Made by a program: the position numbers and the translations under genes. From the NCBI GenBank assembly GCA_001179505.1, contig CDMY01000381.1, positions 28,179 through 92,178 on the forward strand: 64,000 bases of DNA, written 5' to 3'. This stretch comes from Vitrella brassicaformis CCMP3155. Its lineage: Eukaryota; Protista; Chromerida. Below, in pieces: positions 27,565-60,251 of the stretch (position 1 is its first letter; the number at the start of each line of letters is the position of its first letter). The notes beneath the pieces are model-generated. The model saw nothing but the letters and a program-made list of their open reading frames with translations. It made no database searches and was not told where the DNA came from.

Positions 27565-30500
27565 TATAAGAACGCACGCATACACATTCCTTGTGTGCCT
27601 GTCCGGCTCCTTCAGCTGGTTTCGTCTCTCAAGAAGCCCTGAGGGTCCTCACTCATCACACGCAAAACACCTCACGGTGGGCGAGAAATTCACCGATCGC
27701 TCGAGGCACACACCATCCATTGCCTCTTCCGCTGTATGTGCGTGCAGGCTGAGTGAGATTGCAGAGCTTGCTGCGGCTGTCGCGGACTCTCCCTGCCCGG
27801 CCAGCGATGCCATCGTGCACCTCGGCAACCCCACTCCGTTCCAACGAACCCACTCCACAGAGGTGCCCTCATCCACATCGGGCAATGGCGAGGACACGCC
27901 TTCAAGCACCAGCACCAGAAGCGAGAGGGAGCAAACGTAGAAGGAGAGCTGAGACACATGCACTGCTGGGTGATCGCGTTGATACATCGGGCCGCATTAT
28001 TATGTCTGTATTATTGGGTGCCTGGGTGTAGTCAGTAGCTCCCTTCTTTGATTTGCTGGCAGACAATGGCCGGATTGATATTTGTGTGAAAGACAGTGCC
28101 GGAGACTGCGCGCGTGTGTGTGTGTGGTTGTTGCTGGGGGGCGACGCATCTATGTTGATAGGTGTGTGCGTGTGCCGTGGGTTGCATGCATACAAGGAGA
28201 CGGCGGTGGCAGTGCTTATTCATTGACGCATTTCGTTCACTCACCCGAGTGACTGACTCAAGGCGCCAATTTTCTGGTATGCATCGATGTGAACTTTCTT
28301 ATTTAAGTAGATACATGAACGGGCGACGAAGTTCGTCTAAGCATCAGTCGTATCAAGCAAGGAAAAGGGAACAATACATGTAGAAAACAATGGATTTAAG
28401 CGCTCGTTGGCTGCGAAAACATGTCGCACACTGCAAACAAGCGCGAGACATCCAACATGACACACACTTTCACGAAATCCAGGTCCAGCCAGCCACCTCA
28501 CAGCCCCGGAGCGGAGCTGGTGTGGGGCCTGTAAGGCCCGCGGCTGACGAAGTCCTCAGGAAACGCGTTGGCTCTCCATGGCCCTCTGGCGGCCGCCGCG
28601 CGCTGTGCACGACTCGCCACTTGAAACGCGTTGTGCTTCATCAACTCGACGGACAGAAGCTGGCTCCAATGGTTGATGATGCTCTCTCGAAAAGCTCTGT
28701 CCTCCTCCGTGGGAATCGATGTGGGGCGAGGCTTTCGCTTGGCGAGCATCTTGAGAAGTCCATGGTCTTCTCTCCCCATCTGCCGAATGTCTCCGCAGCA
28801 AGAGGCACGAAGCGGAAGCCGGCTGCTTGGGTGGTTGGTCTATACTTGTCGATCTTGTCTTTCTCCGCAAGCTGAGCCGCCTTGCCACCAGGAAGCTGTG
28901 CGCCATGCCGGTTGACTGTCCGGTGGAAGGGAATGGGGGAGTTGTCAGGGCGGCAGGGGTGGGCGACGGTGACGTCGAGCAAATAGTCGCTTCCGTCGAT
29001 CACACAATAGATGTCCATGCGCTGGTTGTTGGGGTTGTCGTCAGGCAGGGTGATGCCGAGGCTGTGCAGAGACACCTCCACATTGAAGGGAACATCTGCC
29101 TCAGCCAGGATGCGAACAAACAAATTGCGCATGTTGGTGTATCTCGTGACCCGCTCACGGCCGGTGTGACACACGTAGAAGTGATCGCCAAACTTGTCGA
29201 CCTCCCCGCCGCAGATGCATCGCTGCGAGACGGTTGCGTGCGGGAGGGCAATGCCGAGACACCCGGCGACGGCATGGCGATACTGGAAGTTGTTTAGTGT
29301 CTTGCTATCGCTGGAAGGGATTGCTGACAGCCAAACAGACGAAAGAGGCCCTTGGCAGCTCAAAAGACGGGCGCGGGCTGTGCTGTCGGGGGGGAGGGAG
29401 TTGAAGAGCTCGTTGAAGCGGAACTTATGCAGTTGATCGGTCAGGCGCTGCTGTAGCCGAACCTGCGGTCTCGAGATAAGGTCCTGGAGGGAGGGGAGGG
29501 AGAAGGAGGGGCCGACCACCTCAGAGATGGCAGCGAGGGCGGGGACTGCAGCTTGAAGCCAGGATAGATCCAGGAGAGCAGCGGGCCTACCCTGAGGCAT
29601 CCACGGTGCTTCTCGGAACCGGCTAGAGACATCAGATGCCGTCACACCGATCGAGCCCAGAAAAGCCGCACGGGCAATCGTGGATGCAGAGACAAGGCCA
29701 AAACCTTCCAGCCGAATGGGTAGCTGCACTTGTGTGGAGACCGAGGCGGGGAAGTCGCCGGGAAAGCGGAAGATGCGCCTGAATGCCGTGATAATGGCGG
29801 CGTCATGTCGCTCGGCGGCTGCCAGGGAGACATCGGATTCTGGGGGAAGGAGGTGCAACCAATAGTTCAGCCGGGGGGATGCACAATAGCGGAGAAGTAG
29901 GCCTGAGCCCTGTAATCCCTTCTGAGCAAAAGTCACGATTGCGTCGAGCAGCGGCTGGTGGCTGCTGGTGATCTTCTAGAGGCTGTGCTGGATGAAATAG
30001 TCGCCACCAAGTGGGCAGCCGAGGACAGTGATACCTTCAATGGAGCACTTGACGCTGGAAGCAGCGATGTCCGCCGGGATGTCGGAGTCTTGTTGCCAGC
30101 GGGGGCTTCATACAGCACTCTTGTCTCTCCGCACCCTCAACTTCTTCTCGGCCAGAAGCTGTTCGGCTCTGTCCACATACCCCATAACACGTGTCTCGTC
30201 CAGTTCACCATCGATGTCGTCCATGAACGCACTAACGAAGTCGTCGGGGAACTCCTCTTGCAGTTTGACGAGGGCGGGGTGGAGGCCCAGGCAAAAGAGG
30301 AAAGGGCCCGCCGCGTCGCCTTGCTGGGTGCCCTCCTGACTGAGAATTGTCTGTTCCTCCGTCCTTCATGCGATACCATAGTTCAGCCGGGGTGCCGTAG
30401 AACTGCCAGAAGAAATCGACAAGGGACGGCCACTTTGTGCCGAGCTCGTCGAGGATCGCCTGACGGTCGATGCTGTTGAAGGCGTTCTTGCAATCCAAAG

Positions 30501-33500
30501 TCACCAAGACCCGTCTACCGGAATCATCGCGGCGTGTCTCCATGTAGGTCTGACAGGCCCTAAAAGTCTTCTCTCCGCCTGCCGACGTACCGACCGCAAA
30601 CTGTAGGGGTGAGAAGTCGTCCTCAAAGGCCAGCTTGTTCTCCATACAAACTGCCTTCGTCACCCATCTCCAAAGCACATCACCCATAGCAATCGGCCGG
30701 ACACCACCGTTGTCTTTCATCAGAGCGAAAAGGCGGGCGGCCGAAAGAGTTATAGTGCAGCTGTCCGGCATATTACCAGCGAGCATCCGGCTGACAAGGG
30801 AGGGCAGGGGGAAGGTCTCGTCTTCTGCCGAGGCGTCACCCTCTCCCATGCAGGCACGAAGATGCTCATACCGCCATCCCGTGGGGCCGGCTGCGGAACC
30901 TCGCGGCGCCGTCTTGAGGGCAGCCAGTAGAACTCTGGGTGGGACCGTGAGAGGGACGGGCGGTCCATCCGGGCCGTTCTGGGGCTGCGGCTTTGTGGGG
31001 AGCGGAGCTGCAGGGTGTAGGTCCTTGAGCTGCTGGAGGGTCGCCGTCGCTGGAGCGACCTTGGCGGCCGTCAGCCGTCTTGCCGCACGTGACAGCTCCC
31101 CTTGTTTCACAAACCTCTCTGCCGCTCGCAACTTGATCTCCTCTAGGGATGGCTCTGGTACACCCTCCACTGGTCCGTCGCCACGTGGAGCGCAAACGTG
31201 GCGACCCTGCTTAGCAAAATTTCTGGACTCGTCGAGTAATCCTTGCCATTCTCCAGCCCAAAAACGCTTGAAGCGAGAACCCCACTTGCGGTGGCCGCCC
31301 GTCTTGCCGCGATTCATCGGGAAGAGCAGCATAGTCGGCAAGAAAATAGCTGTCAAGCAGCCGACATCCGAATCCTCCTCGTCCTTCGCGTACTTCTCGG
31401 TGGTATCCACCACCATCTTTAGCGAGTGGCGGACACATCCAGGGATGCGTGATATGGTGCGAACGCCCAGCTTAAAGTGGTCATCCCGTTGCTCGGCAGT
31501 GAGAGTGCGAAGATAATCAAGCCCACGCTGCGGGAAAATTCCTCTCGAGCCAAACCAGTGGGAGACGTGGGGCGGATCAGGTGGTGGACCAGAGGGAGGG
31601 GGAGGTCCTCCTCCGTTTGGGGGCGGCCCATTGCCGCCCGAGTCACNNNNNNNNNNNNNNNNNNNNNNNNNNNNNNNNNNNNNNNNNNNNNNNNNNNNNN
31701 NNNNNNNNNNNNNNNNNNNNNNNNNNNNNNNNNNNNNNNNNNNNNNNNNNNNNNNNNNNNNNNNNNNNNNNNNNNNNNNNNNNNNNNNNNNNNNNNNNNN
31801 NNNNNNNNNNNNNNNNNNNNNNNNNNNNNNNNNNNNNNNNNNNNNNNNNNNNNNNNNNNNNNNNNNNNNNNNNNNNNNNNNNNNNNNNNNNNNNNNNNNN
31901 NNNNNNNNNNNNNNNNNNNNNNNNNNNNNNNNNNNNNNNNNNNNNNGCCAGAAGAAATCGACAAAGGACGGCCACTTTATGCCGAGCTCGTCGAGGATCG
32001 ACTGACGGTCGATGCTGTTGAAGGCGTTCTTGCAATCCAAAGTCACCAAAACCCGTCTACCGGAATCATCGCGGCGTGTCTCCATGTAGGTCTGACAGGC
32101 CCTGAAAGTCTTCTCTCCGCCTGCCAACGTACCGACCGCAAACTGTAGAGGCGAGAAGTCCTCCTCAAAGGCAAGCTTGTTCTCCATACAAACTGCCTTC
32201 GTCACCCATCTCCAAAGCACATCACCCATAGCAATCGGCCGGACACCACCGTTGTCTTTCATCAGAGCGAAAAGGCGGGCGGCCGAAAGAGTTGTAGTGC
32301 AGCTGTCCGGCATGTTACCAGCGAGCATCCGGCTGACAAGGGAGGGCAGGGGGACGGTCTCGTCTTCTGCCGAGGCGTCACCCTCTCCCATGCAGGCACG
32401 AAGATGCTCATACCGCCATCCCGTGGGGCCGGCTGCGGAACCTCGCGGCGTCGTCTTGAGGGCAGCCAGTAGAACTCTGGGTGGGACCGTGAGAGGGACG
32501 GGCGGTCCATCCGGGCCGTTCTGGGGCTGCGGCTTTGTGGGAAGCGGAGCTGCAGGGTGTAGGTCCTTGAGCTGCTGGAGGGTCGCTGCCATCGCTGGAG
32601 CGACCTTGGCGGCCGTCAGCCGTCTTGCCGCATATGACAGCTCCCCTTGTTTCACAAACCTCTCTGCCGCTCGCAACTTGATCTCCTTTAGGGATGGCTC
32701 TGGTACACCCTCCACTGGTCCGTCGCCACGTGGAGCGCAAACGTGGCGACCCTGCTTAGCAAAATTTCTGGACTCGTCGAGTAATCCTTGCCATTCTCCA
32801 GCCCAAAAACGCTTGAAGCGAGAACCCCACTTGCGGTGGCCGCCCGTCTTGCCGCGATTCATCGGGAAGAGCAGCATAGTCGGCAAGAAAATAGCTGTCA
32901 AGCAGCCGACATCCGAATCCTCCTCGTCCTTCGCGTACTTCTCGGTGGTATCCACCACCATCTTTAGCGAGTGGCGGACACATCCAGGGATGCGTGATAT
33001 GGTGCGAACGCCCAGCTTAAAGTGGTCATCCCGTTGCTCGGCAGTGAGAGTGCGAAGATAATCAAGCCCACGCTGCGGGAAAATTCCTCTCGAGCGAAAC
33101 CAGTGGGAGACGTGGGGCGGATCAGGTGGTGGACCAGGGGGAGGGGGAGGTCCTCCTCCGTTTGGTGGCGGCCCATTGCCGCCCGAGTCACCATCTCCTG
33201 CCCCGCCATCTCCTGGGTCACCGGGTGACGGGCCGGGCGGCTGCGGGGGTACAAATCCACCCCTACCTCGAGCACCTCGGGCGCCTCGTGGAGCTCCACT
33301 TGCTCCTCTACCGCGACCCCTCCCCCGAGCTCGGCGCGTTGGCGGTACAGGCTGCGAAGCCCCTCCTTCACCGTCCCCGCCTCGACCTGTCATTTCTCGG
33401 GTATCCGGGGGCGTGTCTTGGGTGTCTGGAGGCGGAACGACTGTATCTCGGGTGATCGGAGGTGGTGGCGGTGGCGGTGGCGGGGGGGAAGGTGGAGGAG

Positions 33501-34679
33501 GCGGGGGTGGTGGTGGGGGTGGTGGGGACGACGGAGGAGGCGGTTGAGAGCCGCCCCCTGGGTTAGAACAGGGGGGCGGCGGGGGAAGGTCGGGCTCCGT
33601 TCGCTGTCGTCGCAACTCACGGGCCCGGCGGCCCCTCCCACTGGGTTGCCCCGCACCCCGCTGACGGAAGCATTGACCGCCACAGAAAGCCGTACATATC
33701 ATACATCTGCCAAAACCTCTGTTTCTGGCTGAGCGCTGGCGGACATCTGTCGGCGGCTGAGAGGGAGGCGTAGGGGCGCGGGATCATCGAGCCAAGCCGA
33801 GAAGATGTCTCCCGGGTCGCGAAGCCCTTCTGGAGGATCTGAGTTCTCCGGGTCAAAGCCCTCGCGTGCTGCGATCTCTGCCGCATCAGAGGGTCGGTGT
33901 TGAGGATGCTCTCTTGTGTCATCCCAAGCATCGAGGATGTCGTCCAACTCTCGAAGGCCCTCGGCGGGTCACAGTTGTCCGGGTCGTAGCCCTCGCGCGA
34001 TGTCATGTCAGCCAGAGCCCCAGGCCGATCGGGGGGAAGTGTGGGGCGATCGCTGCTATTCGGCCCCGCCGCCAAAGATGGATCTGCACCCGAGGATCCG
34101 CGGCGTTCGCGAGATATCAGCTCATCCAGAGTGAGTTGACCGCCGGCACCCGCCCTTCCCCTGCCCACTGTCAAATCGCGGTCCTCCGCCATATCCATCC
34201 GTCCACGTCCATCCATGGTGTCTCCCACTTCGTTCGTCCTATCGACTTCTTGGTCATCGCCCGTGGACGGGGCTGCATCACCATTGACCGAATCCATGTG
34301 GGTGTCCTGGTCATGTCGATTTTCCAGGCCACTGGACGCCACTTCCTCCTCCAAGTCCTCACATGTCGGTGCGGCCGCCCCCTCTTGCAAACGCCGGCGG
34401 GTGCGGCGTCGCCGTTGTCTATCGGTGCGACGCTGGCGTCGGATGGCCGAGCGAGGTGAGGTCCCTCGATTGGCGATGCCCGCCGGGGGAGAGGGAGGCG
34501 GTACGAGGCGGGTCGGTACATTGATGGCAGCGGGGGGACGTGTCTCCGATGGATTCCCGAGGCTGTCTGACGGGCCCGCAGCATGGCCATCATCTCTCGC
34601 GACTTCCATACAGGCGCACGGCCACGCGGCCCAGTCGCCTGCAACCTCCGCACCCGCTGCGGGTCACTCTCATCCAACG

Positions 34680-35170
34680 GTAGTAGGGACATGAAGTGGT
34701 TGCCAGCGTAGAAAATGAAGAGAATCGGTGGGGGGGGAGGGAAGGGCTCCAGGGCCGACCTGGGCCGCTGCACACGTCCGCCCTCGGGGTGAACTGTCTC
34801 ATGCTCGCGAAGCAAGAGCGGGACGGTGGGGTCTTCGAACTGTTCCTCGGCAAGGACGCAGAGGACGATGGAGGCTGCCGTCACGTTGGCCAGAGAGCGA
34901 ACGTCACACTCGGTAAGTGACGAATTCCGCCTGACGTCCAAGATGTGGTCGCGAGGTCTCGCGAAAAAGGCGTCCAATTGACCCGAAGCACGCCGCCGTT
35001 CAAGATCCCCTACCACTAGCCGGCGCAGTTCCGCTGGTCCGGGGATAGGGGTGGGAAGACGATCAGCCGGCCGTCCATTGAAGAGTCGAAGCCGCCCCAG
35101 ACGCAGCTTGCGAATCGCTGCCTCGAGCAGGCAGTTGTTGTTGGCACCATTCTTGTTAACAAAACGGAAT
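34680..35170 (-). other. OTU-like cysteine protease domain in CRE copy A
   Basis: NKNGANNNCLLEAA (Cys 35131-35133), LTECDVRSLANVTAASIVLCV, ILFIFYAGNHFMSLL (His 34696-34698), matching the OTU layout GDGNCLFRA...E..ALS....I.V...L.Y.G.HY.SL. Confidence 0.75.
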
Positions 35171-35559
35171 GTGATGCTGAAGCTGGCGGAATGAAGAAGG
35201 CCTCCCCGCTGTTGAAGTTGGGTGACAGGGGGAAGGCGAGGGGGGAAGACCATGCTGCGCAACGCAGCCGCTCGCATGGGGCTCTCGACGGCGATTGTCC
35301 CAAAGCAAGACGCGCCGTGTCCTCGGAGAGCTCACCGGTGCTCATCATGTCTCGGATCCGAGCGGCATTGTCGTCACGGGAGTAGCCGGTACCCAGCGGG
35401 CCAATCAGCAGGCCAAAGGTTCGCAGGAGGCACGTTATAGGTAGATGGAAGCGCTCCTCATAGAGGCGGCCCTCAGCAAATTATTCCCACGAGGAGGGAG
35501 GCCACCCCCACTCCCTCTCTAGCTCCAAGATGGCGGCATGCCAGGACTCCCCCGCGAAG

Positions 35560-36101
35560 GGACAATGAGCCTCATTCCGCGCCGTGCGAGAGTTGGCAGA
35601 CTCCTCGGCCTCCACACACGGCCCACAAACGAGTGAATTGCAGGCTCGACACGGCAGATGGCGGAACTCCTGGTCAAGTGGCCGTGGAAGAGAGCAACCC
35701 GGGCATACATGGTCACCAGAGGAGGGGGGAGAAAGCCGGAGTGGGTCGGGAGCGAGGACGAGAGCCGACACGTCGGAGACACCAAGAAGGCACTCCGGAC
35801 AAAAAGGGTCCCGGCAAGTTGGGCATTCGATGAGTGGTGGGGGAATTGCCGAAGGTGAGCCCGCCTGATGGAGGCTACACGCTCGCCCCTCAACATAGTC
35901 GGGAAGCCGAGCCCGCTGGGTTTCAGCGAGAGGGACAACGCAATAGATACAGCACCGATGAGACGCCCGGGCGGCCGCGGGAGGGTCCCGCGACGAGTCG
36001 CGCGGGAGAGAGGGCCAGTGGTCATGGAGACACACGATATCTCTCGCAGGGCGATCCTCCGCACAGAGCTGACACGTCTCGAAGGCAGAGTCCAAACTCA
36101 T
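35560..36101 (-). other. Two RING-like zinc-binding clusters at the CRE ORF N-terminus
   Basis: CQLC-x10-C(LH)...HRCCIYC...CPTCRDPF(CPEC) and CPGC-x14-CRAC-x4-CGPC-x17-CPF. Confidence 0.65.
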
Positions 36102-36379
36102 CACTTGGCCGAAGAGCAAGAAAAGTAGAGAGAGGGCAAGTCCGCAAGGTAACATACGAGGGGAAATCAACGCATTGACCGACACGACTCAAATGGAAGC
36201 TGTCACGCGAAGACCACCGACTCTGACCCCGTCAATGCTCGTCGACCACGTCTCGGTAACACCGGTCGAAACACACGAAGGGCCCGCGTCACGGCGACTC
36301 CGATACGGGTGGGCTCAATCGGAGCCTAGAGACATGCCCTGCCTGGGCCAGGCAGGGAGACAAACACGGGAGGATCCAG

Positions 36380-36680
36380 GCACACGGCCTGCAGCAACGG
36401 TCACTCCCTATTAGGCACACCGCCCACCTCGACACCGGCTCACGGCCGGAGAAGGCAACTCCTCAGGCCCACGGCCAAGCTGCACAGGCGCACGGCCTGT
36501 CGCAGAAAACTGTCCTCCAGCAACCACACTGACACCGGCACACGGCCGGCTGGGGTGTCCTTGGGACGCAAACAGGCTCACGGCCTGGCAGCAACGTCCT
36601 CAGGCACACGCGGCACGCTTGCACTGGCACACGGCCAGTCACGAGATCTTCAGATGGCCCCTAAACGCCGCACGGACCAC
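36380..36680 (-). repeat. Degenerate tandem repeats in the CRE 5' UTR
   Basis: Seven exact CACGGCC cores (36383, 36441, 36470, 36491, 36541, 36579, 36630) plus variants, usually preceded by (a/c)ggc(a/t/g). Confidence 0.8.
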
Positions 36681-36970
36681 CAGGTCTTTCGCGGGGTCGG
36701 TCAGGCGTAGATAGGGCGCGGAGAGCCGAAGCAGGCTCTCACGGAAGTGCTTTGCATTGGGCAAGAGGAGGCGCAGTGGCGCCGGGTGAACTTGGGTTCA
36801 GGGGAGACAAAAAAGATATCGCCAGGTCCGTCACGACGAGACGGACGCGGTGGCGCCCTCAGGTGAGGGCGGCGATGCCGATGAGCATGATTCTCTGATA
36901 ACCACACAGCCCTGTGGGGTAGCATTCATAATCAGGTACTATTCATGTATGTGAAGAAGTGTCCCATATT

Positions 36971-37545
36971 CATCAGGTGGCAAGACGGCGCAGCTTGCCG
37001 AGAAGGACAAGTTTGACAAGTACGGTCCCACCGCCCAGGCGGCCGGTTCCGCTTTGTGCCGCTCGCTGCAGAGACATTTGGCAGATGGGGAGACAAGACG
37101 ATGGACTTTCTCAAGATGCTCGCCAAGCGGAAGCCCCGCCCCACCTCCATTCCCGCTGACGAGGACGCAGCGTTCCGTGAGAGCATCATCAATCATTGGA
37201 GCCAGCTTCTGTCCGTCGAGTTGATGAAGCACAACGCGTTCCAAGTGGCGAGTCGTGCACAACGTGCTGCGGCCGCCAGAGGGCCACGGAGGGCCAGCGC
37301 GTTTCCGGAGGACTTCGTCAGCCGCGGGCTGTACAGGCCACACACCGGCCCCGCTCCGGGGCTGTGAGGTGGCTGGCTGGATCTGGATGTTGTGAGTGTG
37401 TATGTGGTACTGCATGTCTCACGTTTGTTTGCAGTGTGTGACATGCATTTGTTTGCAGTCAATGAGTGTTGTCCGTTGGCTATGCACGGTTGTGTTTCCT
37501 GTTGCTTGTCTGACACGGATGCTTAGACGAACTTCGTCGCCCGTT
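36971..37545 (+). mobile_element. 5'-truncated CRE copy (RLE end and complete 3' UTR)
   Basis: PLAAETFGRWGDKTMDFLKMLAKRKPRP...PAPGL*, then a UTR ending gatgcttagacgaacttcgtcgcccgtt. Confidence 0.92.
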
Positions 37546-37834
37546 TTATGTGTCAACCAAGGGCACACCCCATAATCATCATCTTTTGCAAAATACTTCA
37601 ACGCACACGTTGTCGCATCTCAACGAGAACGCTTTCACAGGTCTGCATTGGGACCATTTATTGAATTTGCTGAGCCCGCAATTGTATGGAAACCAAGAAC
37701 TTTGGCCGTTTGGATGTCGAATTTACAATCAATTAAAGACTCAGACGCAGATGAGCTAGCAAGCTGTCCTGGGGATCACAAAAAGCTGGCAGTTAAGCGA
37801 TAGTTGGATGGGGTGTGGGTTATGACGTCCCTGT

Positions 37835-51709: not shown

Positions 51710-52470
51710 TCACCTCAAGTACGTGATAACTCTGTCGAGGCCGCACTCGAGCTGATAGTCGCACCTTGAGCTGGAGCGGCTTCCAATTGTAGATAAACTG
51801 ACCCACACAAAGGAACAGAGACACAGGTCATGTCGACGCATGGATGAAGCCAGCTGATCCATACTACCTTGACGACGTGGCCTGATGGATGGCTGGGGTC
51901 CCTCCAAAGCTCCAAAAACAAAGTCTGAGAGCATGCAGAGGCATGTTGGAACAATTGCCATTCTCTCGCAGCTTCGGCCCCTACCGATGCAAGCGGCGGC
52001 TGGCGGCCGTCAAAGCCCTCCAAATATCTGACAGAGACAGAGACACAGTCCCTTTCTCCCGCCGGCATTTCGCGTTGTGTGTCTCCAGACACCTCAGGAG
52101 ATAGCTGGGGGAGCTGTCATGTGTGGCAAAGAGCATGAAACTGAGGCTGTTCCAGAACTTAGAGGCCTCGTCCAGACCCGGTGTCTGAAACGAATCAGAG
52201 AGAACAGAGACACGACAGCAGTCGATTCGTGTGGTCACTTGCTGACAAACCTTCTTGAGTCGCTTGGTTGCCCGCTGCTGTAGGTCAGGATCATATGGAT
52301 TGGCCTTCGCCTCGAGCAGATCGGCCATAGTTGAGAAGAAATACTCGGCCGGAAAAGCAGAGAACATAGGATGGCCGTACACCTGAGACAAGAAGGGAGA
52401 GATTGAGAGCCGTGTCTTTCCCGACTTTCATTTCCGACCACGCTGTAGTGAAGGGCTTCGGCTATGCACG
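51710..52470 (-). pseudogene. Histidine acid phosphatase (branch 2), C-terminal half, cut by CRE copy B
   Basis: SFMLFATHDSSPSYLLRCLE|..FDGRQPPLAS|TLFLELWRD...HVVK|FIYNWKPLQLK / CDYQLECGLDRVITYL: the HD motif (52116-52121), PPxAS-LxxELW-VxxxYN and CxL motifs. The RHG half is absent. Confidence 0.75.
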
Positions 52471-55400
52471 GCCACCTGACCAGGAGTTCCGCCATCTGCC
52501 GTGTCGAGCCTGCAATTCACTCGTTTGTGGGCCGTGTGTGGAGGCCGAGGAGTCTGCCCGCCGGAACTCTCGCACGGCGCGGAATGAGGCTCATTGTCCC
52601 TTCGCGGGGGAGCCCTGGCATGCCGCCATCTTGGAGCTAGAGAGGGAGTGGGGGTGGCCTCCCTCCTCGTGGGAAGGATTTGCTGAGGGCCGCCTCTATG
52701 AGGAGCGCTTCCATCTACCTATAACGTGCCTCCTGCGAACCTTTGGCCTGCTGATTGGCCCGCTGGGTACCGGCTACTCCCGTGACGACAATGCCGCTCG
52801 GATCCGAGACATGATGAACACCGGTGAGCTCTCCGAGGACACGGCGCGTCTTGCTTTGGCGACAATCGCCGTCGAGAGCCCCATGCGAGCGGCTGCGCTG
52901 CGCAGCATGGTCTTCCTTCCTCGCCTTCCCCCTGTCACCCAACTTCAACAGCGGGGAGGCCTTCTTCATTCCGCCAGCTTCAGCATCACATTCCGTTTTG
53001 TTAACGAGAATGGTGCCAACAACAACTGCCTGCTCGAGGCAGCGATTCGCAAGCTGCGTCTGGGGCGGCTTCGACTCTTCAATGGACGGTCGGCTGATCG
53101 TCTTCCCACCCCTATCCCCGGACCAGCAGAACTGCGCCGGCTAGTGGTAGGGGACCTTGAACGACGGCGTGCTTCGGGTCAATTGGACGCCTTCTTCGCG
53201 AGACCTCGCGACCACATCTTGGACGTCAGGCGGAATTCGTCACTTACCGAGTGTGACGTTCGCTCTCTGGCCAACGTGACGGCAGCCTCCATCGTTCTCT
53301 GCGTCCTTGCCGAGGAACAGTTCGAATACCCCACCGTCCCGCTCTTGCTTCGCGAGCATGAGACAATTCACCCCGAGGGCGGACGTGTGCAGCGGCCGAG
53401 GACGGCCCTGGAGCCCTTCCCTCCCCCCCCACCGATTCTCTTCATTTCCTACGCTGGCAACCACTTCATGTCCCTACTACCGTTGGATGAGAGTGATCCC
53501 GCAGCGGGTGCGGAGGTTGCAGGCGACTGGTGCCGATGTGTTGAGTGGCCGTGCGCCTGTATGGAAGTCGCGAGAGATGATAGCCATGCTGCGGGCCCGT
53601 CAGACGGCCTCGGGAATCCATCGGAGACACGTCCCCCTGCTGCCATCAATGGACCGACCCGCCTCGTACCGCCTCCCTCTCCCCCGGAGGGCATCGCCAA
53701 TCCAGGGACCTCACCTCGCTCGGCCATCCGACGCCAGCGTCGCACCGATAGACAACGGCAATGCCGCACCCGCCGGCGTTTGCAAGAGGAGGCGGCCGTA
53801 CCGACCCGTAAGGATTTGGAGGAGGAAGTGGCGTCCAGTGGCCTGGAAAATCGACACGACCAGGACACCCACATGGATTCGGTCAATGGCGATGCAGCCC
53901 CGTCCACGGGAGATGACCAAGAAGTCGATAGGACGAACGAAGTGGGAGACACCATGGATGGACGTGGATGGATGGATATGGCGGAGGACCGCGATTTGAC
54001 AGTGGGCAGGGGAAGGGCAGATGCCAGCGGGCAACTCACTCTGGATGAGCTGATATCTCGCGAAGGCCGCGGATCCTCGGGTGCAGATCCATCTTTGGCG
54101 GCGGGGCCGAATAGCGGCGATCGCCCCACACTTCCCCCCGATCGGCCTGGGGCTCTGGCTGACATGACGTCGCGCGAGGGCTACGACCCGGACAACTGTG
54201 ACCCGCCCGAGGGCCTTCGAGAGTTGGTCGACATCCTCGATGCTTGGGATGACACAAGAGAGCATCTTCAACACCGACCCTCTGATGCGGCAGAGATCGC
54301 AGCACGCGAGGGCTTTGACCCGGAGAACTCAGATCCTCCAGAAGGGCGTCGCGACCCGGGAGGCATCTTCTCGGCTTGGCTCGATGATCCCGCCGCCCCT
54401 ACGCCTCCCTCTCAGCCGCCGGCAGATGTCCGCCGGCGCTCAGCCAGAAACAGAGGTTTTGGCAGATGTATGATATGTACGGCTTTCTGTGGCGGTCAAT
54501 GCTTCCGTCAGCAGGGTGCGGGGCAACCCAGGGGGAGGGGCCGCCGGGCCCGTGAGTTGCGACGACAGCGGACGGAGCCCGACCTTCCCCCGCCGCCCCC
54601 CTGTTCTAACCAAGCGGGCGGCTCTCAACCGCCTCCTTCGTCGTCCCCACCACCCCCACCACCGCCCCCGCCTCCTCCACCTTCCCCCCCGCCACCGTCA
54701 CCACCTTCGATCACCCGAGACACAGTCGTTCCGCCTCCAGACACCCGAGACACGCCCCCGGACACCCGAGAACGGTAGGTCGAGGCGGGGACGGTGAAGG
54801 AGGTGCTTCGCAGCCTGTACCGCCAACGCGCCGAGCTCGGGGGAGGGGTCGCGGTAGAGGAGCACGTGGAGCTCCACGAGGCGTCCGAGGTGCTCGAGGT
54901 AGGGGAGGATTTGTGCCCCCGCCGCCGCCCGGCCCGCCACCCGGTGACCCGGGAGATGGCGGGGCAGGAGATGGTGACTCGGGCGGCAATGGGCCGCCCC
55001 CAAACGGAGGAGGACCTCCCCCTCCCCCTGGTCCACAACCTGACCCGCCCCACGACTCCCACTGGTTTCGCTCGAAAGGAATTTTCCCGCAGCGTGGGGT
55101 TGACTATCTTCGCACTCTCACTGCCGAGCAACGGGATGACCACTTTAAGCTGGGCATTCGCACCATATCACGCATCCCTGGATGTGTCCGCCACTCGCTA
55201 AAGATGGTGTTGGATACCACCGAGAAGTATGTGAAGGACGAGGAGGATTCGGATGTCGGCTGCTTGACAGCTATTTTCTTGCCGACTATGCTGCTGTTCC
55301 CGATGAATCGTGGCGGGACGGGCGGCCACCGCAAGTGGGGTTCTCGCTTCAAGCGTTTTTTGCTGGAGAATGGCAAGGATTACTCGACGAGTCCAGAAAT

Positions 55401-58400
55401 TTTGCTGAGCAGGGTCGCCACGTTTTCGCTCCACGTGGCGACGGACCAGTGGAAGGCGTGCCCGAGCCATCCCTAGAGGAGATCAAGCTGCGAGCGACAG
55501 AGAGGTTTGTGAAACAGGGGGAGCTGTCACGTGCGGCACGACGGCTGACGGCCGCCAAGGTCGCTCCAGCGACGGCGGCGACACTCCAGCAGCTCAAGGA
55601 CCTACACCCTGCAGCTCCGCTCCCCACAAAGCCGCAGCCCCAGAACGGCCCGGATGGACCGCCCCTCCCTCTCACGGTCCCACCCAGAGTTCTACTGGCN
55701 NNNNNNNNNNNNNNNNNNNNNNNNNNNNNNNNNNNNNNNNNNNNNNNNNNNNNNNNNNNNNNNNNNNNNNNNNNNNNNNNNNNNNNNNNNNNNNNNNNNN
55801 NNNNNNNNNNNNNNNNNNNNNNNNNNNNNNNNNNNNNNNNNNNNNNNNNNNNNNNNNNNNNNNNNNNNNNNNNNNNNNNNNNNNNNNNNNNNNNNNNNNN
55901 NNNNNNNNNNNNNNNNNNNNNNNNNNNNNNNNNNNNNNNNNNNNNNNNNNNNNNNNNNNNNNNNNNNNNNNNNNNNNNNNNNNNNNNNNNNNNNNNNNNC
56001 CCCTGGTCCACAACCTGACCCGCCCCACGACTCCCACTGGTTTCGCTCGAAAGGAATTTTCCCGCAGCGTGGGGTTGACTATCTTCGCACTCTCACTGCC
56101 GAGCAACGGGATGACCACTTTAAGCTGGGCATTCGCACCATATCACGCATCCCTGGATGTGTCCGCCACTCGCTAAAGATGGTGGTGGATACCACCGAGA
56201 AGTATGTGAAGGACGAGGAGGATTCGGATGTCGGCTGCTTGACAGCTATTTTCTTGCCGACTATGCTGCTGTTCCCGATGAATCGTGGCGGGACGGGCGG
56301 CCACCGCAAGTGGGGTTCTCGCTTCAAGCGTTTTTTGCTGGAGAATGGCAAGGATTACTCGACGAGTCCAGAAATTTTGCTGAGCAGGGTCGCCACGTTT
56401 TCGCTCCACGTGGCGACGGACCAGTGGAAGGCGTGCCCGAGCCATCCCTAGAGGAGATCAAGCTGCGAGCGACAGAGAGGTTTGTGAAACAGGGGGAGCT
56501 GTCACGTGCGGCACGACGGCTGACGGCCGCCAAGGTCGCTCCAGCGACGGCGGCGACACTCCAGCAGCTCAAGGACCTACACCCTGCAGCTCCGCTCCCC
56601 ACAAAGCCGCAGCCCCAGAACGGCCCGGATGGACCGCCCCTCCCTCTCACGGTCCCACCCAGAGTTCTACTGGCTGCCCTCAAGACGGCGCCGCGAGGTT
56701 TCGCAGCCGGCCCCACGGGATGGCGGTATGAGCATCTTCGTGCCTGCATGGGAGAAGGTGACGCCTCGGCAGAAGACGAGACCGTCCCCCTGCCCTCCCT
56801 TGTCAGCCGGATGCTCGCTGGTAACATGCCGGACAGCTGCACCACAACTCTTTCGGCCGCCCGCCTTTTCGCTCTGATGAAAGACAACGGTGGTGTCCGG
56901 CCGATTGCTGTGGGTGATGTGCTTCAGAGATGGGTGACGAAGGCAGTTTGTATGGAGAACAAGCTTGCCTTTTAGGAGGACTTCTCACCCCTACAGTTTG
57001 CGGTCGGTACGTCGGCAGGCGGAGAGAACATTTTCCGGGCCTGTCAGACCTACATGGAGACACGCCGCGATGATTCCGATAGACGGGTTTTGGTGACTTT
57101 GGACTGCAAGAACGCCTTCAACAGCATCGACCGTCAGGCGATCCTCGACGAGCTTGGCACAAAGTGGCCGTCCCTTNNNNNNNNNNNNNNNNNNNNNNNN
57201 NNNNNNNNNNNNNNNNNNNNNNNNNNNNNNNNNNNNNNNNNNNNNNNNNNNNNNNNNNNNNNNNNNNNNNNNNNNNNNNNNNNNNNNNNNNNNNNNNNNN
57301 NNNNNNNNNNNNNNNNNNNNNNNNNNNNNNNNNNNNNNNNNNNNNNNNNNNNNNNNNNNNNNNNNNNNNNNNNNNNNNNNNNNNNNNNNNNNNNNNNNNN
57401 NNNNNNNNNNNNNNNNNNNNNNNNNNNNNNNNNNNNNNNNNNNNNNNNNNNNNNNNNNNNNNNNNNNNNNNNNNNNCGCTTCAAGCGTTTTTGGGCTGGA
57501 GAATGGCAAGGATTACTCGACGAGTCCAGAAATTTTGCTGAGCAGGGTCGCCACGTTTTCGCTCCACGTGGCGACGGACCAGTGGAAGGCGTGCCCGAGC
57601 CATCCCTAGAGGAGATCAAGCTGCGAGCGACAGAGAGGTTTGTGAAACAGGGGGAGCTGTCACGTGCGGCACGACGGCTGACGGCCGCCAAGGTCGCTCC
57701 AGCGACGGCGGCGACACTCCAGCAGCTCAAGGACCTACACCCTGCAGCTCCGCTCCCCACAAAGCCGCAGCCCCAGAACGGCCCGAATGGACCGCCCCTG
57801 CCTCTTACGGTCCCACCCAGAGTTCTACTGGCTGCCCTCAAAACGGCGCCGCGAGGTTCCGCAGCCGGCCCCACGGGATGGCGGTATGAGCATCTTCGTG
57901 CCTGCATGGGAGAGGGTGACGCCTCGGCAGAAGACGAGACCGTCCCCCTGCCCTCCCTTGTCAGCCGGATGCTCGCTGGTAACATGCCGGACAGCTGCAC
58001 CACAACTCTTTCGGCCGCCCGCCTTTTCGCTCTGATGAAAGACAACGGTGGTGTCCGGCCGATTGCTGTGGGTGATGTGCTTCAGAGATGGGTGACGAAG
58101 GCAGTTTGTATGGAGAACAAGCTTGCCTTTGAGGAGGACTTCTCACCCCTACAGTTTGCGGTCGGTACGTCGGCAGGCGGAAAGAAGATTTTCCGGGCCT
58201 GTCAGACCTACATGGAGACGCCGCGATGATTCCGATAGACGGGTTCTGGTGACTTTGGATTGCAAGAACGCCTTTAACAGCATCGACCGTCAGGCGATCC
58301 TCGACGAGCTCGGCACAAAGTGGCCGTCCCTTGTCGATTTCTTCTGGCAGTTCTACGGGACCCCGGCTGAACCATGGTATCGCATGGAGGACGGACGCAC

Positions 58401-59946
58401 GGAGACAATCCTCAGTCAGGAGGGCACCCAGCAAGGCGACGCGGCGGGCCCTTCCTCTTCTGCCTGGGCCTCCACCCCGCCCTCGTCAAGCTGCAAGAGG
58501 AGTTCCCCGACGACTTGGTTAGTGCGTTCATGGATGACATCGATGGTGGACTGGATGAGACACGTGTTACGGGGTATGTGGACAGAGCCGAACAGCTTCT
58601 GGCTGAGAAGAAGTTGAGGCTGCGGAGAGACAAGAGTGTTGCATGGAGCCCCCGCTGGCAACAAGACTCCGACATCCCGGCGGACATCGCTGCTTCCGGC
58701 GTCAAGTGCTCCACTGAAGGCATCACTGTCCTCGGCTGCCCGCTTGGCGGCAACTCTTTCATCCAGCATAGCCTCGAGAAGATCACCAGAAGCCACCAGC
58801 CGCTGCTCGACGCAATTGTGACTTTTGCTCACAGGGCTCAGGCCTTCTTCTCCGCTATTGTGCATCCCCCCGGCTGAACTATTGGCTGCGCCTCCTTCCC
58901 CAGAATCCGATGTCTCCCTGGCAGCCGCCGAGCGACATGACGCCGCCATTATCACGGCATTCAGGCGCATGTTCCGCTTTCCCGGCGACTTCCCCGACTC
59001 GGTCCCCGCACAGGTGCAGCTATCCATCCGGCTGGGAGGTTTTGGCNNNNNNNNNNNNNNNNNNNNNNNNNNNNNNNNNNNNNNNNNNNNNNNNNNNNNN
59101 NNNNNNNNNNNNNNNNNNNNNNNNNNNNNNNNNNNNNNNNNNNNNNNNNNNNNNNNNNNNNNNNNNNNNNNNNNNNNNNNNNNNNNNNNNNNNNNNNNNN
59201 NNNNNNNNNNNNNNNNNNNNNNNNNNNNNNNNNNNNNNNNNNNNNNNNNNNNNNNNNNNNNNNNNNNNNNNNNNNNNNNNNNNNNNNNNNNNNNNNNNNN
59301 NNNNNNNNNNNNNNNNNNNNNNNNNNNNNNNNNNNNNNNNNNNNNNACCGATGTGGCGCACAGCTTCCTGGTGGCAAGGCGGCTCAGCTTGCGCAGAAAG
59401 ACAAGATCGACAAGTATGGACCAACCACCCAAGCAGCCGGCTTCCGCTTCGTGCCTCTCGCTGCGGAGACATTCGGCAGATGGGGAGAGAAGACGATGGA
59501 CTTTCTCAAGATGCTCGCCAAGCGAAAGCCTCGCCCCACATCCATTCCCACGGAGGAGGACACAGCTTTTCGAGAGAGCATCGTCAACCATTGGAGCCAG
59601 CTCCTGTCCGTCGAGCTGATGAAGCACAACGCATTTCAAGTGGCGAGTCGTGCACAGCGCGCGGCGGCCGCCAGAGGGCCGCGGAGGGCCAGCGCGTTTC
59701 CGGAGGACTTCGTCAGCCGCGGGCCTTACAGGCCACACACCAGCCCCGCTCCGGGGCTGTGAGGTGGCTGGCTGGACGTGGATTTCGTGATTGTGTGTGT
59801 CTTGTTTGCATGTCTCGCCCTTGTTTGCAGTGTGCGACATGTTTTCGCAGTCAACGAGCGTTTGGCCATTGTTCTTTGCATGTATTGTTCCCTTTTCCTT
59901 GCTTGGTACGATTGATGCTTAGACGAACTTCGTCGCCCGTTCATGT
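52467..59946 (+). mobile_element. CRE copy B, 5'-truncated inside the second RING-like cluster; OTU, RT and RLE present
   Basis: Same family as copy A. OTU Cys at 53027 and His at 53462; SAFMDDIDG at ~58522; PLAAETFGRWG; 3' UTR to ...cccgttcatgta. Several gaps carry overlapping redundant contigs (55000-58330), and frameshifts and stops are present. Confidence 0.95.
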
Positions 59947-60251
59947 AGCCTGCAGATTGGCTAGTAACAAACCCTGCTCATTCACTTATCCCCCCCTTCC
60001 CTCGAATTTTGGAAGGCATAACGGAGTTGTGTCGTGCTGTCTCTATCACTCCGTGCCATTAAAGGACGCCCCGCGTACATGATCGACTGACCTGTGTGTG
60101 TGTCCAGGGTTTGCGGCACATGCGGACCAGCGACCTTTCCAATGTCTTTCGCAACCAGTACTCTAGCGATGGTCAGCTTGCTGCTTAGACCTAGACCATG
60201 ATGCGTACTTCGCACGGCGGTCCGTCTTGGCGTGTGATGGTGATGTGTGCA

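What the first reader, a model, noticed from the sequence alone, without database searches (positions are those of the whole stretch)
33700..36160. CRE retrotransposon carrying RING-like zinc fingers plus an OTU-like deubiquitinase: a possible ubiquitin-editing module on a LINE
Seen: upstream of a standard CRE RT-CCHC-RLE core, the reconstructed single ORF of about 2,000 aa begins with two RING-like Cys/His clusters, then an OTU-like domain (N-N-N-C...AGNHFMSL). The catalytic Cys and His are intact in both large copies (35131/34696 and 53027/53462). Copy B reads openly through the position where copy A has a stop, so the domains belong to the element ORF. Established: trypanosomatid CRE elements have N-terminal C2H2 fingers, NeSL and Utopia carry Ulp1 proteases, Dualen/RandI carry a Josephin-like protease, and some Helitrons carry OTU. 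I do not recall a CRE element with RING plus OTU. Inference: the element may write and erase ubiquitin to evade host silencing or degradation, or the OTU may process the polyprotein as some viral proteases do.
Basis: partly seen in the sequence, partly recalled or inferred. Interest (0 to 1): 0.88.

Follow-up and report, generated by a model that had tools for sequence, protein, structure and literature searches.

The report
Jumping gene carrying ubiquitin-type protease
Two decayed copies of a jumping gene (a LINE retrotransposon) in the alga Vitrella carry, ahead of the usual copying enzymes, a conserved protease with the shape of an OTU ubiquitin-removing enzyme and zinc fingers resembling ubiquitin-ligase fingers; I found no report of this combination on such an element.

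Summary
The genome is Vitrella brassicaformis. The window has two copies of a restriction-like-endonuclease (RLE) LINE. Copy A (minus, about 28313-36880) is full length but broken. Copy B (plus, about 52475-59947) is 5'-truncated.

- **OTU domain.** The stretch at 34660-35277 (A) and 52883-53500 (B) models as an OTU fold. The 50 best Foldseek PDB hits are all OTU domains, and VIA-align gives Z 13.9 to yeast Otu2. The Asn-Cys and His motifs are invariant in all seven aligned copies (three sub-families, 35-37% identical to the window's).
- **Part of the element.** Related single ORFs of 2190 aa (genome) and 2350 aa (metagenome contig) hold zinc fingers, OTU, RT, CCHC and RLE in one frame. dN/dS is 0.23-0.52 for the OTU and 0.13-0.56 for the fingers.
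- **Zinc fingers.** "RING-like" is only partly supported. Cluster 2 matches CNOT4 and TRIM32 RINGs weakly (E 1e-3 to 7e-3). A central knuckle gives sub-threshold IBR hits (E 8.5e-5). Language-model neighbours are RBR ligases. The structure model is poor.
- **Not tested.** The CRE label and any ubiquitin activity remain inference.
- **Novelty.** Ulp1 and Josephin proteases on LINEs, and OTU on Helitron/Ginger transposons, are published. OTU plus RING/IBR on a LINE was not found, so this is a new variant of a known theme.

First readers noted the same architecture on other DNA of this genome (s1-231059).

The parts
28313..36880 (-). Copy A of the LINE: full length but decayed. It contains an assembly gap at 31647-31946 with duplicated flanks.
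   Evidence: tblastn map against the intact 2190-aa relative. 3' end motif at 28318-28337. The 5' limit is set by where other genomic copies stop matching.
36102..36880 (-). 5' untranslated region of copy A, shared at 77-88% identity with other copies.
35790..36080 (-). Cys/His cluster 1 (CxxC ... H ... CxxC ... C ... CPxC-x4-CPEC). The last part is an IBR/Rcat-like knuckle.
   Evidence: Alignment A2 invariant columns. Pfam IBR_1 E 8.5e-5 and 3.3e-4 in sister copies, below the curated cut-off. VIA Z 3.6 to HHARI RING1.
35538..35705 (-). Cys/His cluster 2, RING-type (C-x2-C-x14-C-x1-2-C-x4-C-x2-C ... C-x7-H).
   Evidence: Profile of A2 against PDB sequences: CNOT4 RING E 1.4e-3, TRIM32 RING E 7.4e-3. 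Pfam zf-RING_4 E 0.043 in a sister copy. pLDDT about 66-72.
35481..35483 (-). Stop codon (TAA) that breaks copy A. Copy B has GGA here.
34660..35277 (-). OTU-fold cysteine protease domain of copy A. Cys codon 35131-35133, His codon 34696-34698. 1-bp deletions lie just outside it, near 35300 and 34664.
33703..34659 (-). Low-complexity linker of copy A. It holds the conserved motif SREG[FY]DP-N--PP-GL ... L-AW twice.
30232..33702 (-). CCCC knuckle (C-x2-C-x3-C-x3-C), Pro/Gly-rich linker and reverse transcriptase of copy A. The RT N-terminal part is duplicated across the N gap.
   Evidence: RVT_1 hits in the intact relatives.
28641..29936 (-). C-terminal CCHC zinc knuckle and restriction-like endonuclease of copy A.
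   Evidence: ORF translation. 47% identity to the intact relative.
52475..59947 (+). Copy B of the LINE, 5'-truncated inside Cys cluster 2. It has three assembly gaps with duplicated flanks.
52883..53500 (+). OTU-fold domain of copy B. Cys codon 53027-53029, His codon 53462-53464. It lies inside the open frame 52403-54778.
36881..37550 (+). 3' fragment of another copy of the same LINE group. It abuts the 5' end of copy A.

Best explanation
The window holds two decayed copies of a non-LTR retrotransposon of the restriction-like-endonuclease (RLE) type from Vitrella brassicaformis. Its single ORF of about 2,000 aa reads, in order:
- a zinc-finger module of the RING/IBR kind, about 200 aa;
- an OTU-fold cysteine protease, about 200 aa;
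- a long disordered linker;
- a CCCC knuckle;
- reverse transcriptase;
- a CCHC knuckle;
- the RLE.

Shown here: the OTU fold, the conserved Asn-Cys and His, the position of these domains inside the element ORF in several diverged families, and purifying selection on them.

Inferred: the OTU domain is an active ubiquitin or ubiquitin-like protease made together with the RT. The zinc fingers bind an E2 or ubiquitin, or act as a ligase. Together they would alter ubiquitin marks on the element's own protein/RNP or on host factors at the integration site. This would protect the element from degradation or silencing. Josephin in Dualen LINEs and OTU/Ulp1 in DNA transposons have been proposed to work this way.
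For: Organism and family:
- The genome is 72.7 Mb in 1064 contigs, and P0003 equals CEL99353.1 of V. brassicaformis.

OTU fold:
- The AlphaFold2 model has pLDDT 76.9 and pTM 0.75.
- Cys49 sits at the start of helix 49-66, after strand 34-41. His194 starts strand 194-200.
- The 50 best Foldseek PDB hits are all OTU domains.
- VIA-align gives Z 13.9 to yeast Otu2 (145 of 155 residues) and Z 13.3 to OTUD3.
- ESM Atlas structure neighbours are OTU/Otubain clusters, TM 0.55-0.64.
- Language-model neighbours are OTU clusters, score 0.93.
- N48, C49 and H194 are invariant across three sub-families that are 35-37% identical to the window's.

Part of the element:
- All 16 genomic matches lie in LINE context.
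- A 2190-aa ORF (L017) and a 2350-aa metagenomic ORF (P0005, at most 37% identical to any Vitrella copy) have the same order.

Selection (dN/dS):
- OTU 0.23-0.52.
- Zinc-finger module 0.13-0.56.
- For comparison: RT 0.12, RLE 0.29, linker 0.44.

Zinc fingers:
- CNOT4 and TRIM32 RING hits, E 1.4e-3 and 7.4e-3.
- IBR_1 E 8.5e-5.
- RBR ligase neighbours, score 0.91.
- A more distant sister LINE has a single RING (zf-RING_2 E 0.005) and no OTU.

Precedent:
- Ulp1 in NeSL/Utopia (PMC4640811).
- OTU in Helitron and Ginger1 (PMC2836005).
Against: - No significant sequence-profile match to OTU: Pfam PF02338 E 0.33 in one of seven members, and no PDB sequence hit with the profile.
- The usual third triad residue (Asp/Asn two places after His) is Met or Val here, so catalytic competence is not assured.
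- The zinc-finger model is poor (pLDDT 50.5). Fold matches are weak: best Foldseek E 0.96 and VIA Z at most 3.6.
- All RING/IBR profile hits lie below the curated cut-offs.
- N-terminal fingers in R2/CRE-type LINEs normally bind target DNA, which could also be their role here.
- No RNA evidence for expression.
- Both window copies are broken.
Confidence: 0.55

Rival explanations
1. The OTU domain is mainly a self-processing protease. It cuts the roughly 2,000-aa polyprotein in the long linkers and releases the finger-OTU part from the RT-RLE part, as OTU-like or papain-like proteases of some RNA viruses process their polyproteins. This does not exclude deubiquitinase activity.
For: - The ORF is unusually long, with disordered linkers of 600-900 aa between the OTU and the RT.
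- A conserved short linker motif, present once or twice, could be a recognition site.
- N-terminal Ulp1-like proteases are known in NeSL/Utopia LINEs (PMC4640811).
Against: - I did not systematically search the linkers for a conserved ubiquitin-like LRGG or Gly-Gly cleavage motif.
- The neighbouring RING/IBR-type fingers point to ubiquitin chemistry rather than simple processing.
- No experimental data either way.
Confidence: 0.25
2. The N-terminal Cys/His clusters are nucleic-acid-binding fingers that pick the target DNA or bind the element RNA, as in R2 and CRE-type LINEs. They are not ubiquitin-ligase-like, and the OTU domain acts alone.
For: - N-terminal zinc fingers are the rule in RLE LINEs (PMC4640811).
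- The RING/IBR evidence is all sub-threshold.
- The structure model is poor.
Against: - The spacing is not C2H2 or CCHC.
- The best profile and language-model neighbours are consistently RING, IBR or RBR ligases, not DNA-binding fingers.
- The sister family has a full-length match to zf-RING_2.
- Three insertions share no target sequence.
Confidence: 0.3
3. The OTU-fold domain is catalytically dead. It serves as a ubiquitin-binding or scaffolding domain.
For: - The acidic or amide third triad residue is missing at His+2.
- There is no Asp three places before the Cys in most families.
Against: - Asn-Cys and His are invariant over families at 30-37% identity, which is not expected for a dead enzyme.
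- Many cysteine proteases work with a Cys-His dyad (general knowledge).
- An Asp/Asn eight places before the Cys is conserved.
Confidence: 0.12
4. The finger-OTU region is a host gene fragment captured by chance in one lineage and is drifting neutrally.
For: Only about 22 candidate places carry it, against 373 candidates for the RT-RLE part.
Against: - The count difference fits the usual 5' truncation of LINEs.
- The region occurs in at least four diverged families, including one from a metagenome.
- dN/dS is well below 1.
- The catalytic motifs are invariant.
- A profile of the element OTU finds none of the eight host OTU loci better than control loci.
Confidence: 0.03

Closest known systems
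[quoted passage not shown]
   Same: They are RLE-type LINEs with a single ORF: an N-terminal ubiquitin-like-protein protease and zinc fingers, then RT, CCHC and RLE.
   Different: The protease here has the OTU fold, not Ulp1. The fingers are RING/IBR-like. No U2 or spliced-leader target was seen. The host is a chromerid alga.
Dualen/RandI LINEs (and Chlamys Penelope-like elements) with a Josephin-related cysteine protease (PMC9977147; 10.1101/2021.04.23.441226)
   Same: A non-LTR retroelement carries a protease of a deubiquitinase family, proposed to interfere with protein degradation. Chlamys also has a nearby Cys/His motif.
   Different: The protease family differs (Josephin against OTU) and so does its position (C-terminal part of the ORF there). 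Dualen also has APE and RNase H, which were not seen here.
OTU domains of Helitron and Ginger1 DNA transposons (PMC2836005)
   Same: An OTU cysteine protease is fused to a transposition protein.
   Different: Those are DNA transposons, and their OTU matches Pfam PF02338 directly. Here the carrier is a retrotransposon, and the OTU is recognisable only by structure and language-model features.
Cellular OTU deubiquitinases (yeast Otu2/OTUD6, OTUD3, OTUD1, OTUD5, otubains) and viral OTU proteases
   Same: Same fold (Z 10-14). The Cys lies at the N-terminus of a helix after an Asn, and the His lies in a C-terminal strand.
   Different: Sequence identity is 10-17%. The Cys loop is longer. There is no Asp/Asn at His+2. 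No Pfam-level match.
RBR ligases (HHARI, HOIP, parkin) and the CNOT4 C4C4 RING
   Same: The order is zinc cluster, IBR-like knuckle, zinc cluster. Cluster 2 has the CNOT4 spacing. In one family the knuckle has the same C-x-H-x2-C-x2-C-x4-C-x2-C spacing that I recall for the HOIP catalytic RING2 (the family's sequence is; the HOIP motif is from memory, not from a tool; a weak hit to that part of HOIP, E 5.6).
   Different: All matches are below the curated thresholds. The C-x-H is not conserved across families. The last ligand pair of cluster 2 is C-x7-H. The fold was not confidently modelled.

Membership tests
OTU cysteine proteases (Pfam PF02338) | OTU alpha/beta fold | tested here: met
   Model pLDDT 76.9. 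The top 50 Foldseek PDB hits are all OTU. VIA Z 13.9 to Otu2 and 13.3 to OTUD3, covering 134-145 of 141-155 residues. ESM Atlas TM 0.55-0.64 to OTU/Otubain clusters.
OTU cysteine proteases (Pfam PF02338) | Catalytic Cys at the start of a helix, preceded by a small residue or Asn (the ...GNC... motif) | tested here: met
   N48-C49 are invariant in 7 sequences of 3 sub-families, and the motif is HNC in P0005. The helix starts at residue 49 in the model.
OTU cysteine proteases (Pfam PF02338) | Catalytic His in a C-terminal beta strand | tested here: met
   H194 is invariant. It lies at the start of strand 194-200.
OTU cysteine proteases (Pfam PF02338) | Third triad residue (Asp/Asn, usually two places after His) | tested here: not met
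   The residue at His+2 is Met or Val in all families. A conserved Asp/Asn eight places before the Cys might substitute. The side-chain geometry could not be read because no model coordinates are available.
OTU cysteine proteases (Pfam PF02338) | Significant match to the family's sequence profile | tested here: not met
   PF02338 E 0.33 in 1 of 7 members. No hit with the profile against PDB sequences. phmmer over 1.84 billion representatives found only 5 proteins, all with this element's own finger-OTU architecture (source checked for three of them).
OTU cysteine proteases (Pfam PF02338) | Deubiquitinase or Ubl-protease activity | not testable with these tools
   Needs an enzyme assay.
RING finger | Eight Zn ligands with RING spacing | tested here: met
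   Cluster 2 reads C-x2-C-x14-C-x1-2-C-x4-C-x2-C ... C-x7-H, conserved in all families. The first six ligands have CNOT4 C4C4 spacing (alignment). The last pair is atypical.
RING finger | Cross-brace fold | tested here: inconclusive
   Model pLDDT 50.5 overall and about 66-72 for cluster 2. Foldseek best E 0.96, with RING domains among the top hits. VIA Z at most 3.6.
RING finger | Significant profile match | tested here: inconclusive
   PDB CNOT4 E 1.4e-3 and TRIM32 E 7.4e-3. Pfam zf-RING_4 0.043 and zf-RING_5 0.023, all below the curated cut-offs.
RBR (RING1-IBR-RING2) ligases | IBR domain between two RING-like domains | tested here: inconclusive
   IBR_1 at 22.8 bits (E 8.5e-5; cut-off 27) on the knuckle between the clusters in C656, and E 3.3e-4 in C871. 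It matches only about 20 of 47 profile positions. Language-model neighbours are RBR/IBR clusters: score 0.91, 159 shared features, which is under the 170 typical for true members.
RBR (RING1-IBR-RING2) ligases | Catalytic Cys (C-x-H) in RING2 | tested here: inconclusive
   A C-x-H-x2-C-x2-C-x4-C-x2-C string, the spacing I recall for HOIP RING2 (from memory, not a tool result), is present in the C656 family only. The His is absent in other families, while a Cys upstream of CPxC is kept in all. HOIP hit E 5.6.
CRE clade of non-LTR retrotransposons | RT groups with CRE1/CRE2/SLACS/CZAR in a phylogeny | not tested
   No reference sequences were on hand. The nearest named relatives of the RT-RLE part are from Closterium, a tardigrade and a nematomorph, with no trypanosomatid element among the 56 hits.
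CRE clade of non-LTR retrotransposons | Insertion into spliced-leader genes (target specificity) | tested here: not met
   Three 3' junctions in the window end at the same element base but have unrelated flanks. Only three junctions were examined.
RLE-type LINE (R2/R4/NeSL/CRE/Hero group) | RT followed by a CCHC knuckle and a PD-(D/E)xK restriction-like endonuclease, in a single ORF | tested here: met
   RVT_1 E 2e-12 and 7.8e-13 in the intact relatives. The window copies are 47-51% identical to them over RT and RLE. The CxC...H...C knuckle and the MD...DVTV...K motifs are read directly in the ORFs.

The most novel reading that the evidence does not exclude
The element carries a complete ubiquitin 'writer plus eraser' pair on one retrotransposon protein: an RBR-like (RING-IBR-RING) ligase module and an active OTU deubiquitinase. 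If so, it edits ubiquitin chains on itself or on host repair or silencing factors during target-primed reverse transcription. That would be an A20-like editing logic evolved on a LINE.
Probability: 0.2. Interest if true: 0.8.

Novelty: new variant of a known kind. Interest (0 to 1): 0.6.

Why it matters
LINEs are usually seen as minimal machines: nucleic-acid binding, RT and an endonuclease. Josephin in Dualen, Ulp1 in NeSL/Utopia, and now OTU with RING/IBR-type fingers in a chromerid LINE show repeated, independent recruitment of ubiquitin-system proteases. This suggests that escaping or steering host ubiquitin pathways is a general need of retrotransposition.

An intact 2190-aa ORF is available for expression, so the idea can be tested directly. 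The OTU domain is so diverged that sequence profiles miss it. Similar modules may therefore be hidden in other transposon libraries.

Tried and rejected
- **Pfam scans of the window ORFs.** They gave no significant OTU, RING or RVT hit.
- **Profile of the OTU alignment against PDB sequences.** Nothing.
- **Exhaustive phmmer over 1.84 billion representatives.** Only 5 proteins, all with the same finger-OTU architecture and no canonical OTU among them.
- **HMM of the element OTU against six-frame translations of the eight host OTU loci.** No better than control loci, so a recent capture from a host OTU gene is rejected.
- **Zinc-finger structure model.** Too poor for a secure fold call.
- **Complex prediction of the OTU domain with ubiquitin (P0135 residues 1-76).** No verdict (score 0.09, mark 0.34). 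This counts neither for nor against binding.
- **Ubiquitin source.** The Vitrella ubiquitin units are split by an intron. It is identical to the Vitrella exon 2 and to the ten first-exon residues visible in the locus.
- **RNA evidence.** No run on record as RNA holds the stretch. One 190-nt contig, 90-95% alike, came from a run only guessed to be RNA, so this is inconclusive.
- **Clade assignment.** No named CRE, R2 or NeSL references turned up. The genome paper lists LINEs only as a class.
- **Longer relatives outside Vitrella** (Closterium and metagenomic proteins). No accessory Pfam domain.
- **Linker between the fingers and the OTU (a UBA-like look).** Poorly conserved, and not pursued.
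- **Handling of broken frames.** Stops and frameshifts of copy A were not read through; the pieces were searched apart.
Full report
**What is there**

The window comes from Vitrella brassicaformis. The assembly is 72.7 Mb in 1064 contigs, matching the published genome. One predicted protein of this element family is CEL99353.1 of that species.

Repeat analysis and ORF listing show two large inverted copies of one element, 93-99% alike over the aligned blocks.

- **Copy A** lies on the minus strand from about 28313 to about 36880. The 3' end is marked by a motif at 28318-28337. The 5' limit is where other genomic copies stop matching.
- **Copy B** lies on the plus strand from about 52475 to about 59947. 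It is 5'-truncated inside the second Cys cluster.
- Both copies contain 300-N assembly gaps flanked by duplicated sequence, which inflates the RT region.
- A third 3' fragment (about 36881-37550, plus strand) abuts the head of copy A. Further fragments lie at 84-1581.

**Checking the observation**

- Copy A has TAA at 35481-35483, where copy B reads GGA and stays open.
- Copy A also has 1-bp deletions near 35300 and 34664, just outside the OTU-like domain, and two in-frame indels. It is a dead copy.
- Copy B has one open frame, 52403-54778, running through cluster 2, the linker, the OTU-like domain and the next linker.

**Do the domains belong to the element?**

A search of the whole genome with the OTU-like domain gave 16 matches on about ten contigs.

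- Some belong to the window's own family, at 62-100% identity.
- Others belong to families only 36-39% identical (C656, C871, C707, C278).
- In every locus examined, the finger region and the OTU-like region are followed by RT and RLE on the same strand.
- Contig C656 holds a single 2190-aa ORF (L017 977-7549, with one assembly gap). It reads fingers, OTU-like domain, a long Arg/Glu-rich linker, a CCCC knuckle, RT, CCHC and RLE.

An exhaustive HMMER search of 1.84 billion representative proteins found only five proteins.

- One is a 2350-aa ORF on a 7.5-kb metagenome contig (ERZ893784), with the same order of domains.
- Its OTU part is at most 37% identical to any Vitrella locus, so it represents another family or another organism.

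The RT-RLE part has many more candidate places in the genome than the 5' part, 373 against 22. This is what 5' truncation of LINEs produces.

**The OTU call**

An alignment of seven copies from three sub-families (A1) has invariant Asn48-Cys49 and His194 among 33 invariant columns.

- The AlphaFold2 model has pLDDT 76.9 and pTM 0.75. The Cys sits at the N-terminus of helix 49-66, after strand 34-41. The His sits at the start of strand 194-200.
- Foldseek against the PDB returned OTU domains in all 50 top places: tick-virus and nairovirus OTUs, Cezanne, OTUD3, A20, DUBA, Otu1/2, otubains and a Wolbachia OTU.
- VIA-align gave Z 13.9 to yeast Otu2 (145 of 155 residues, rmsd 3.3), 13.3 to OTUD3 and 12.9 to DUBA. 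131 chains scored Z 8 or more.
- The ESM Atlas structure search gave TM 0.55-0.64 to OTU/Otubain clusters.
- The language-model feature search gave OTU clusters as nearest neighbours: score 0.93, with 56 of 100 hits in the OTU set.

Sequence profiles do not see the domain.

- Pfam OTU scores E 0.33 in one member.
- A profile search against PDB sequences found nothing.
- A profile of the element's domain does not pick out the eight host OTU loci better than control DNA.

Two conclusions follow. The fold and the Cys/His pair are well supported, and the domain is not a recent capture of a Vitrella OTU gene. One defining feature is not met: the residue two places after the His is Met or Val, not Asp or Asn. 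A conserved Asp/Asn eight residues before the Cys could take that role. This could not be checked without model coordinates.

**The zinc fingers**

The N-terminal 200 aa align between families at 32-37% identity. The conserved ligands are as follows:

- **Cluster 1:** CxxC, then 12-13 residues, an invariant His, a variable Pro-rich loop, then CxxC followed by a helix.
- **Knuckle:** C-x4(-16)-CPxC-x4-CPEC.
- **Cluster 2:** C-x2-C-x14-C-x1-2-C-x4-C-x2-C ... CP-x6-H.

The structure model is poor: pLDDT 50.5 overall and about 66-72 for cluster 2. Fold searches are therefore weak.

- Foldseek's best E is 0.96, with RNF38, MAT1, RNF126 and TRIM32 RINGs at the top.
- VIA-align Z is at most 3.6. RBR RING1 domains (HHARI, UIP4, HOIP, parkin) match residues 8-71. 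RNF144A, TFIIH p44, RNF12 and TRIM25 match residues 127-188.

Sequence profiles give borderline support.

- The alignment profile hits the CNOT4 C4C4 RING (E 1.4e-3) and the TRIM32 RING (E 7.4e-3) with cluster 2.
- Pfam IBR_1 hits the knuckle at E 8.5e-5 and 3.3e-4 in two sister copies. The scores, 22.8 and 20.9 bits, lie below the 27-bit cut-off.
- zf-RING_4 and zf-RING_5 appear at E 0.02-0.04.
- Language-model neighbours are RBR-type ligases: score 0.91, but 159 shared features, fewer than usual for true members.
- In the C656 family the knuckle reads C-x-H-x2-C-x2-C-x4-C-x2-C (sequence). This is the spacing I recall around the catalytic Cys of HOIP RING2. The HOIP motif is from memory; no tool result gave it. 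The profile gave a weak hit to that part of HOIP (E 5.6). The His is not conserved in the other families.
- A more distant LINE family of the same genome (C559) has a single N-terminal RING that matches zf-RING_2 end to end (E 0.005), and it has no OTU. A RING-type finger may therefore be older in this lineage than the OTU.

My reading is a RING/IBR-type module, possibly RBR-like. This is plausible but not proven.

**Selection**

I computed Nei-Gojobori dN/dS between diverged genomic copies:

| Region | dN/dS |
|---|---|
| OTU domain | 0.23-0.52 |
| Finger module | 0.13-0.56 |
| RT | 0.12 |
| RLE | 0.29 |
| Post-OTU linker | 0.44 |

Decay after insertion pushes these values upward. The domains were therefore under purifying selection while the element lineages diverged.

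**What kind of LINE**

- RVT_1 matches the intact relatives.
- The CCHC knuckle and the PD-(D/E)xK-type motifs are readable in the C-terminal ORF.
- The element ends at a fixed base without a poly-A tail, and the three 3' flanks in the window are unrelated. I saw no sign of the spliced-leader specificity that marks classical CRE elements.
- The nearest named relatives of the RT-RLE part are unnamed proteins of Closterium, a tardigrade and a nematomorph. None of six longer relatives shows an accessory Pfam domain.
- The CRE label therefore remains untested. 'RLE-type LINE' is what the data show.

**How it probably works**

Shown: one protein carries fingers, OTU, RT and RLE, and the first two are conserved and selected.

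Inferred: the OTU domain is an active isopeptidase for ubiquitin or a ubiquitin-like protein, and the fingers engage an E2 or ubiquitin. Together they would keep the element's protein or RNP from ubiquitin-dependent destruction, or change ubiquitin marks on repair or chromatin factors at the nick. This follows proposals made for Josephin in Dualen (10.1101/2021.04.23.441226; PMC9977147) and for OTU/Ulp1 in DNA transposons (PMC2836005).

The main rival, which is not exclusive, is self-processing of the very long polyprotein. The fingers could instead be target- or RNA-binding fingers, as in other RLE LINEs.

**Comparison and novelty**

The following are already published:

- Ulp1 proteases in NeSL/Utopia (PMC4640811).
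- Josephin-related proteases in Dualen and Chlamys (PMC9977147; 10.1101/2021.04.23.441226).
- OTU domains in Helitron and Ginger1 (PMC2836005).

Four full-text searches found no paper that describes an OTU domain or a RING finger as part of a non-LTR retrotransposon. That library does not hold Repbase or most subscription journals. The Vitrella genome paper reports LINEs only as 0.63 Mb of sequence. I rate this a new variant of a known kind.

**Limits**

- There is no expression evidence.
- The docking test with ubiquitin gave no verdict and is not evidence either way.
- Both window copies are broken.
- The finger fold is not resolved.
- First readers of this scan noted the same architecture on this stretch (s1-239458) and on another piece of the genome (s1-231059). 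Neither had been followed up.

Noticed in passing
window 30405-32887; 55025-57788: The N-terminal part of the RT region is duplicated (copy A) or triplicated (copy B) across 300-N gaps at 97-100% identity, with spacings of 975-1545 bp. This is most likely scaffolding of collapsed repeat copies rather than real tandem duplication. It makes ORF lengths in the window unreliable.
   Followed up: partly
window 54130-54400 (copy B) and 33770-33910 (copy A); L017 about 5320-5450: A short conserved motif lies in the otherwise low-complexity linker: ...LDELI..., then SREG[FY]DP-N--PP-GL......L-AW. It occurs once in the C656 family and twice in the window's family, and is kept between families at 50-65% identity. 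It may be a docking or cleavage motif. Its function is unknown.
   Followed up: no
window 33667-33705 (copy A), about 54580-54620 (copy B): A C-x2-C-x3-C-x3-C knuckle lies just before the Pro/Gly-rich stretch that precedes the RT. It is also present in the C656 family.
   Followed up: no
window 53501-53560: A small Cys cluster, DWCRC-x4-CAC, lies directly after the OTU domain. It is conserved within the window's family (C785, P0001) but absent from the C656 family.
   Followed up: no
window 36102-36880: The 5' UTR of copy A is full of imperfect copies of GGCCGTG-GCC. Tandem Repeats Finder reports no regular array. The UTR is shared at 77-88% identity with copies on C671, C785, C736 and C630.
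   Followed up: partly
L038 (G000:C559:37000-46999) 3135-3797: A more distant LINE family of the same genome (RT 42% identical) has one clear RING finger at its N-terminus (zf-RING_2 E 0.005, full-length match; RLIM RING E 0.02) and no OTU. A single stop separates the RING frame from the rest of the ORF.
   Followed up: partly
L022 (ENA ERZ893784, contig k147_5442791) 250-7302: An intact 2350-aa ORF with fingers, OTU, RT and RLE lies on a metagenome contig. It is at most 37% identical in the OTU part to any Vitrella copy. This points to the same kind of element in another organism or an unassembled family.
   Followed up: partly
L042/L043 (G000:C33:177343-182144): In the polyubiquitin locus, every ubiquitin repeat seems to be interrupted by an intron at the same place, after codon 10 (MQIFVKTLTG | KTITL...).
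   Followed up: no
window 17485-17847: A weak (33% identity) match to the RLE C-terminal part of the LINE, on the plus strand. It is probably a remnant of a different, older LINE family.
   Followed up: no
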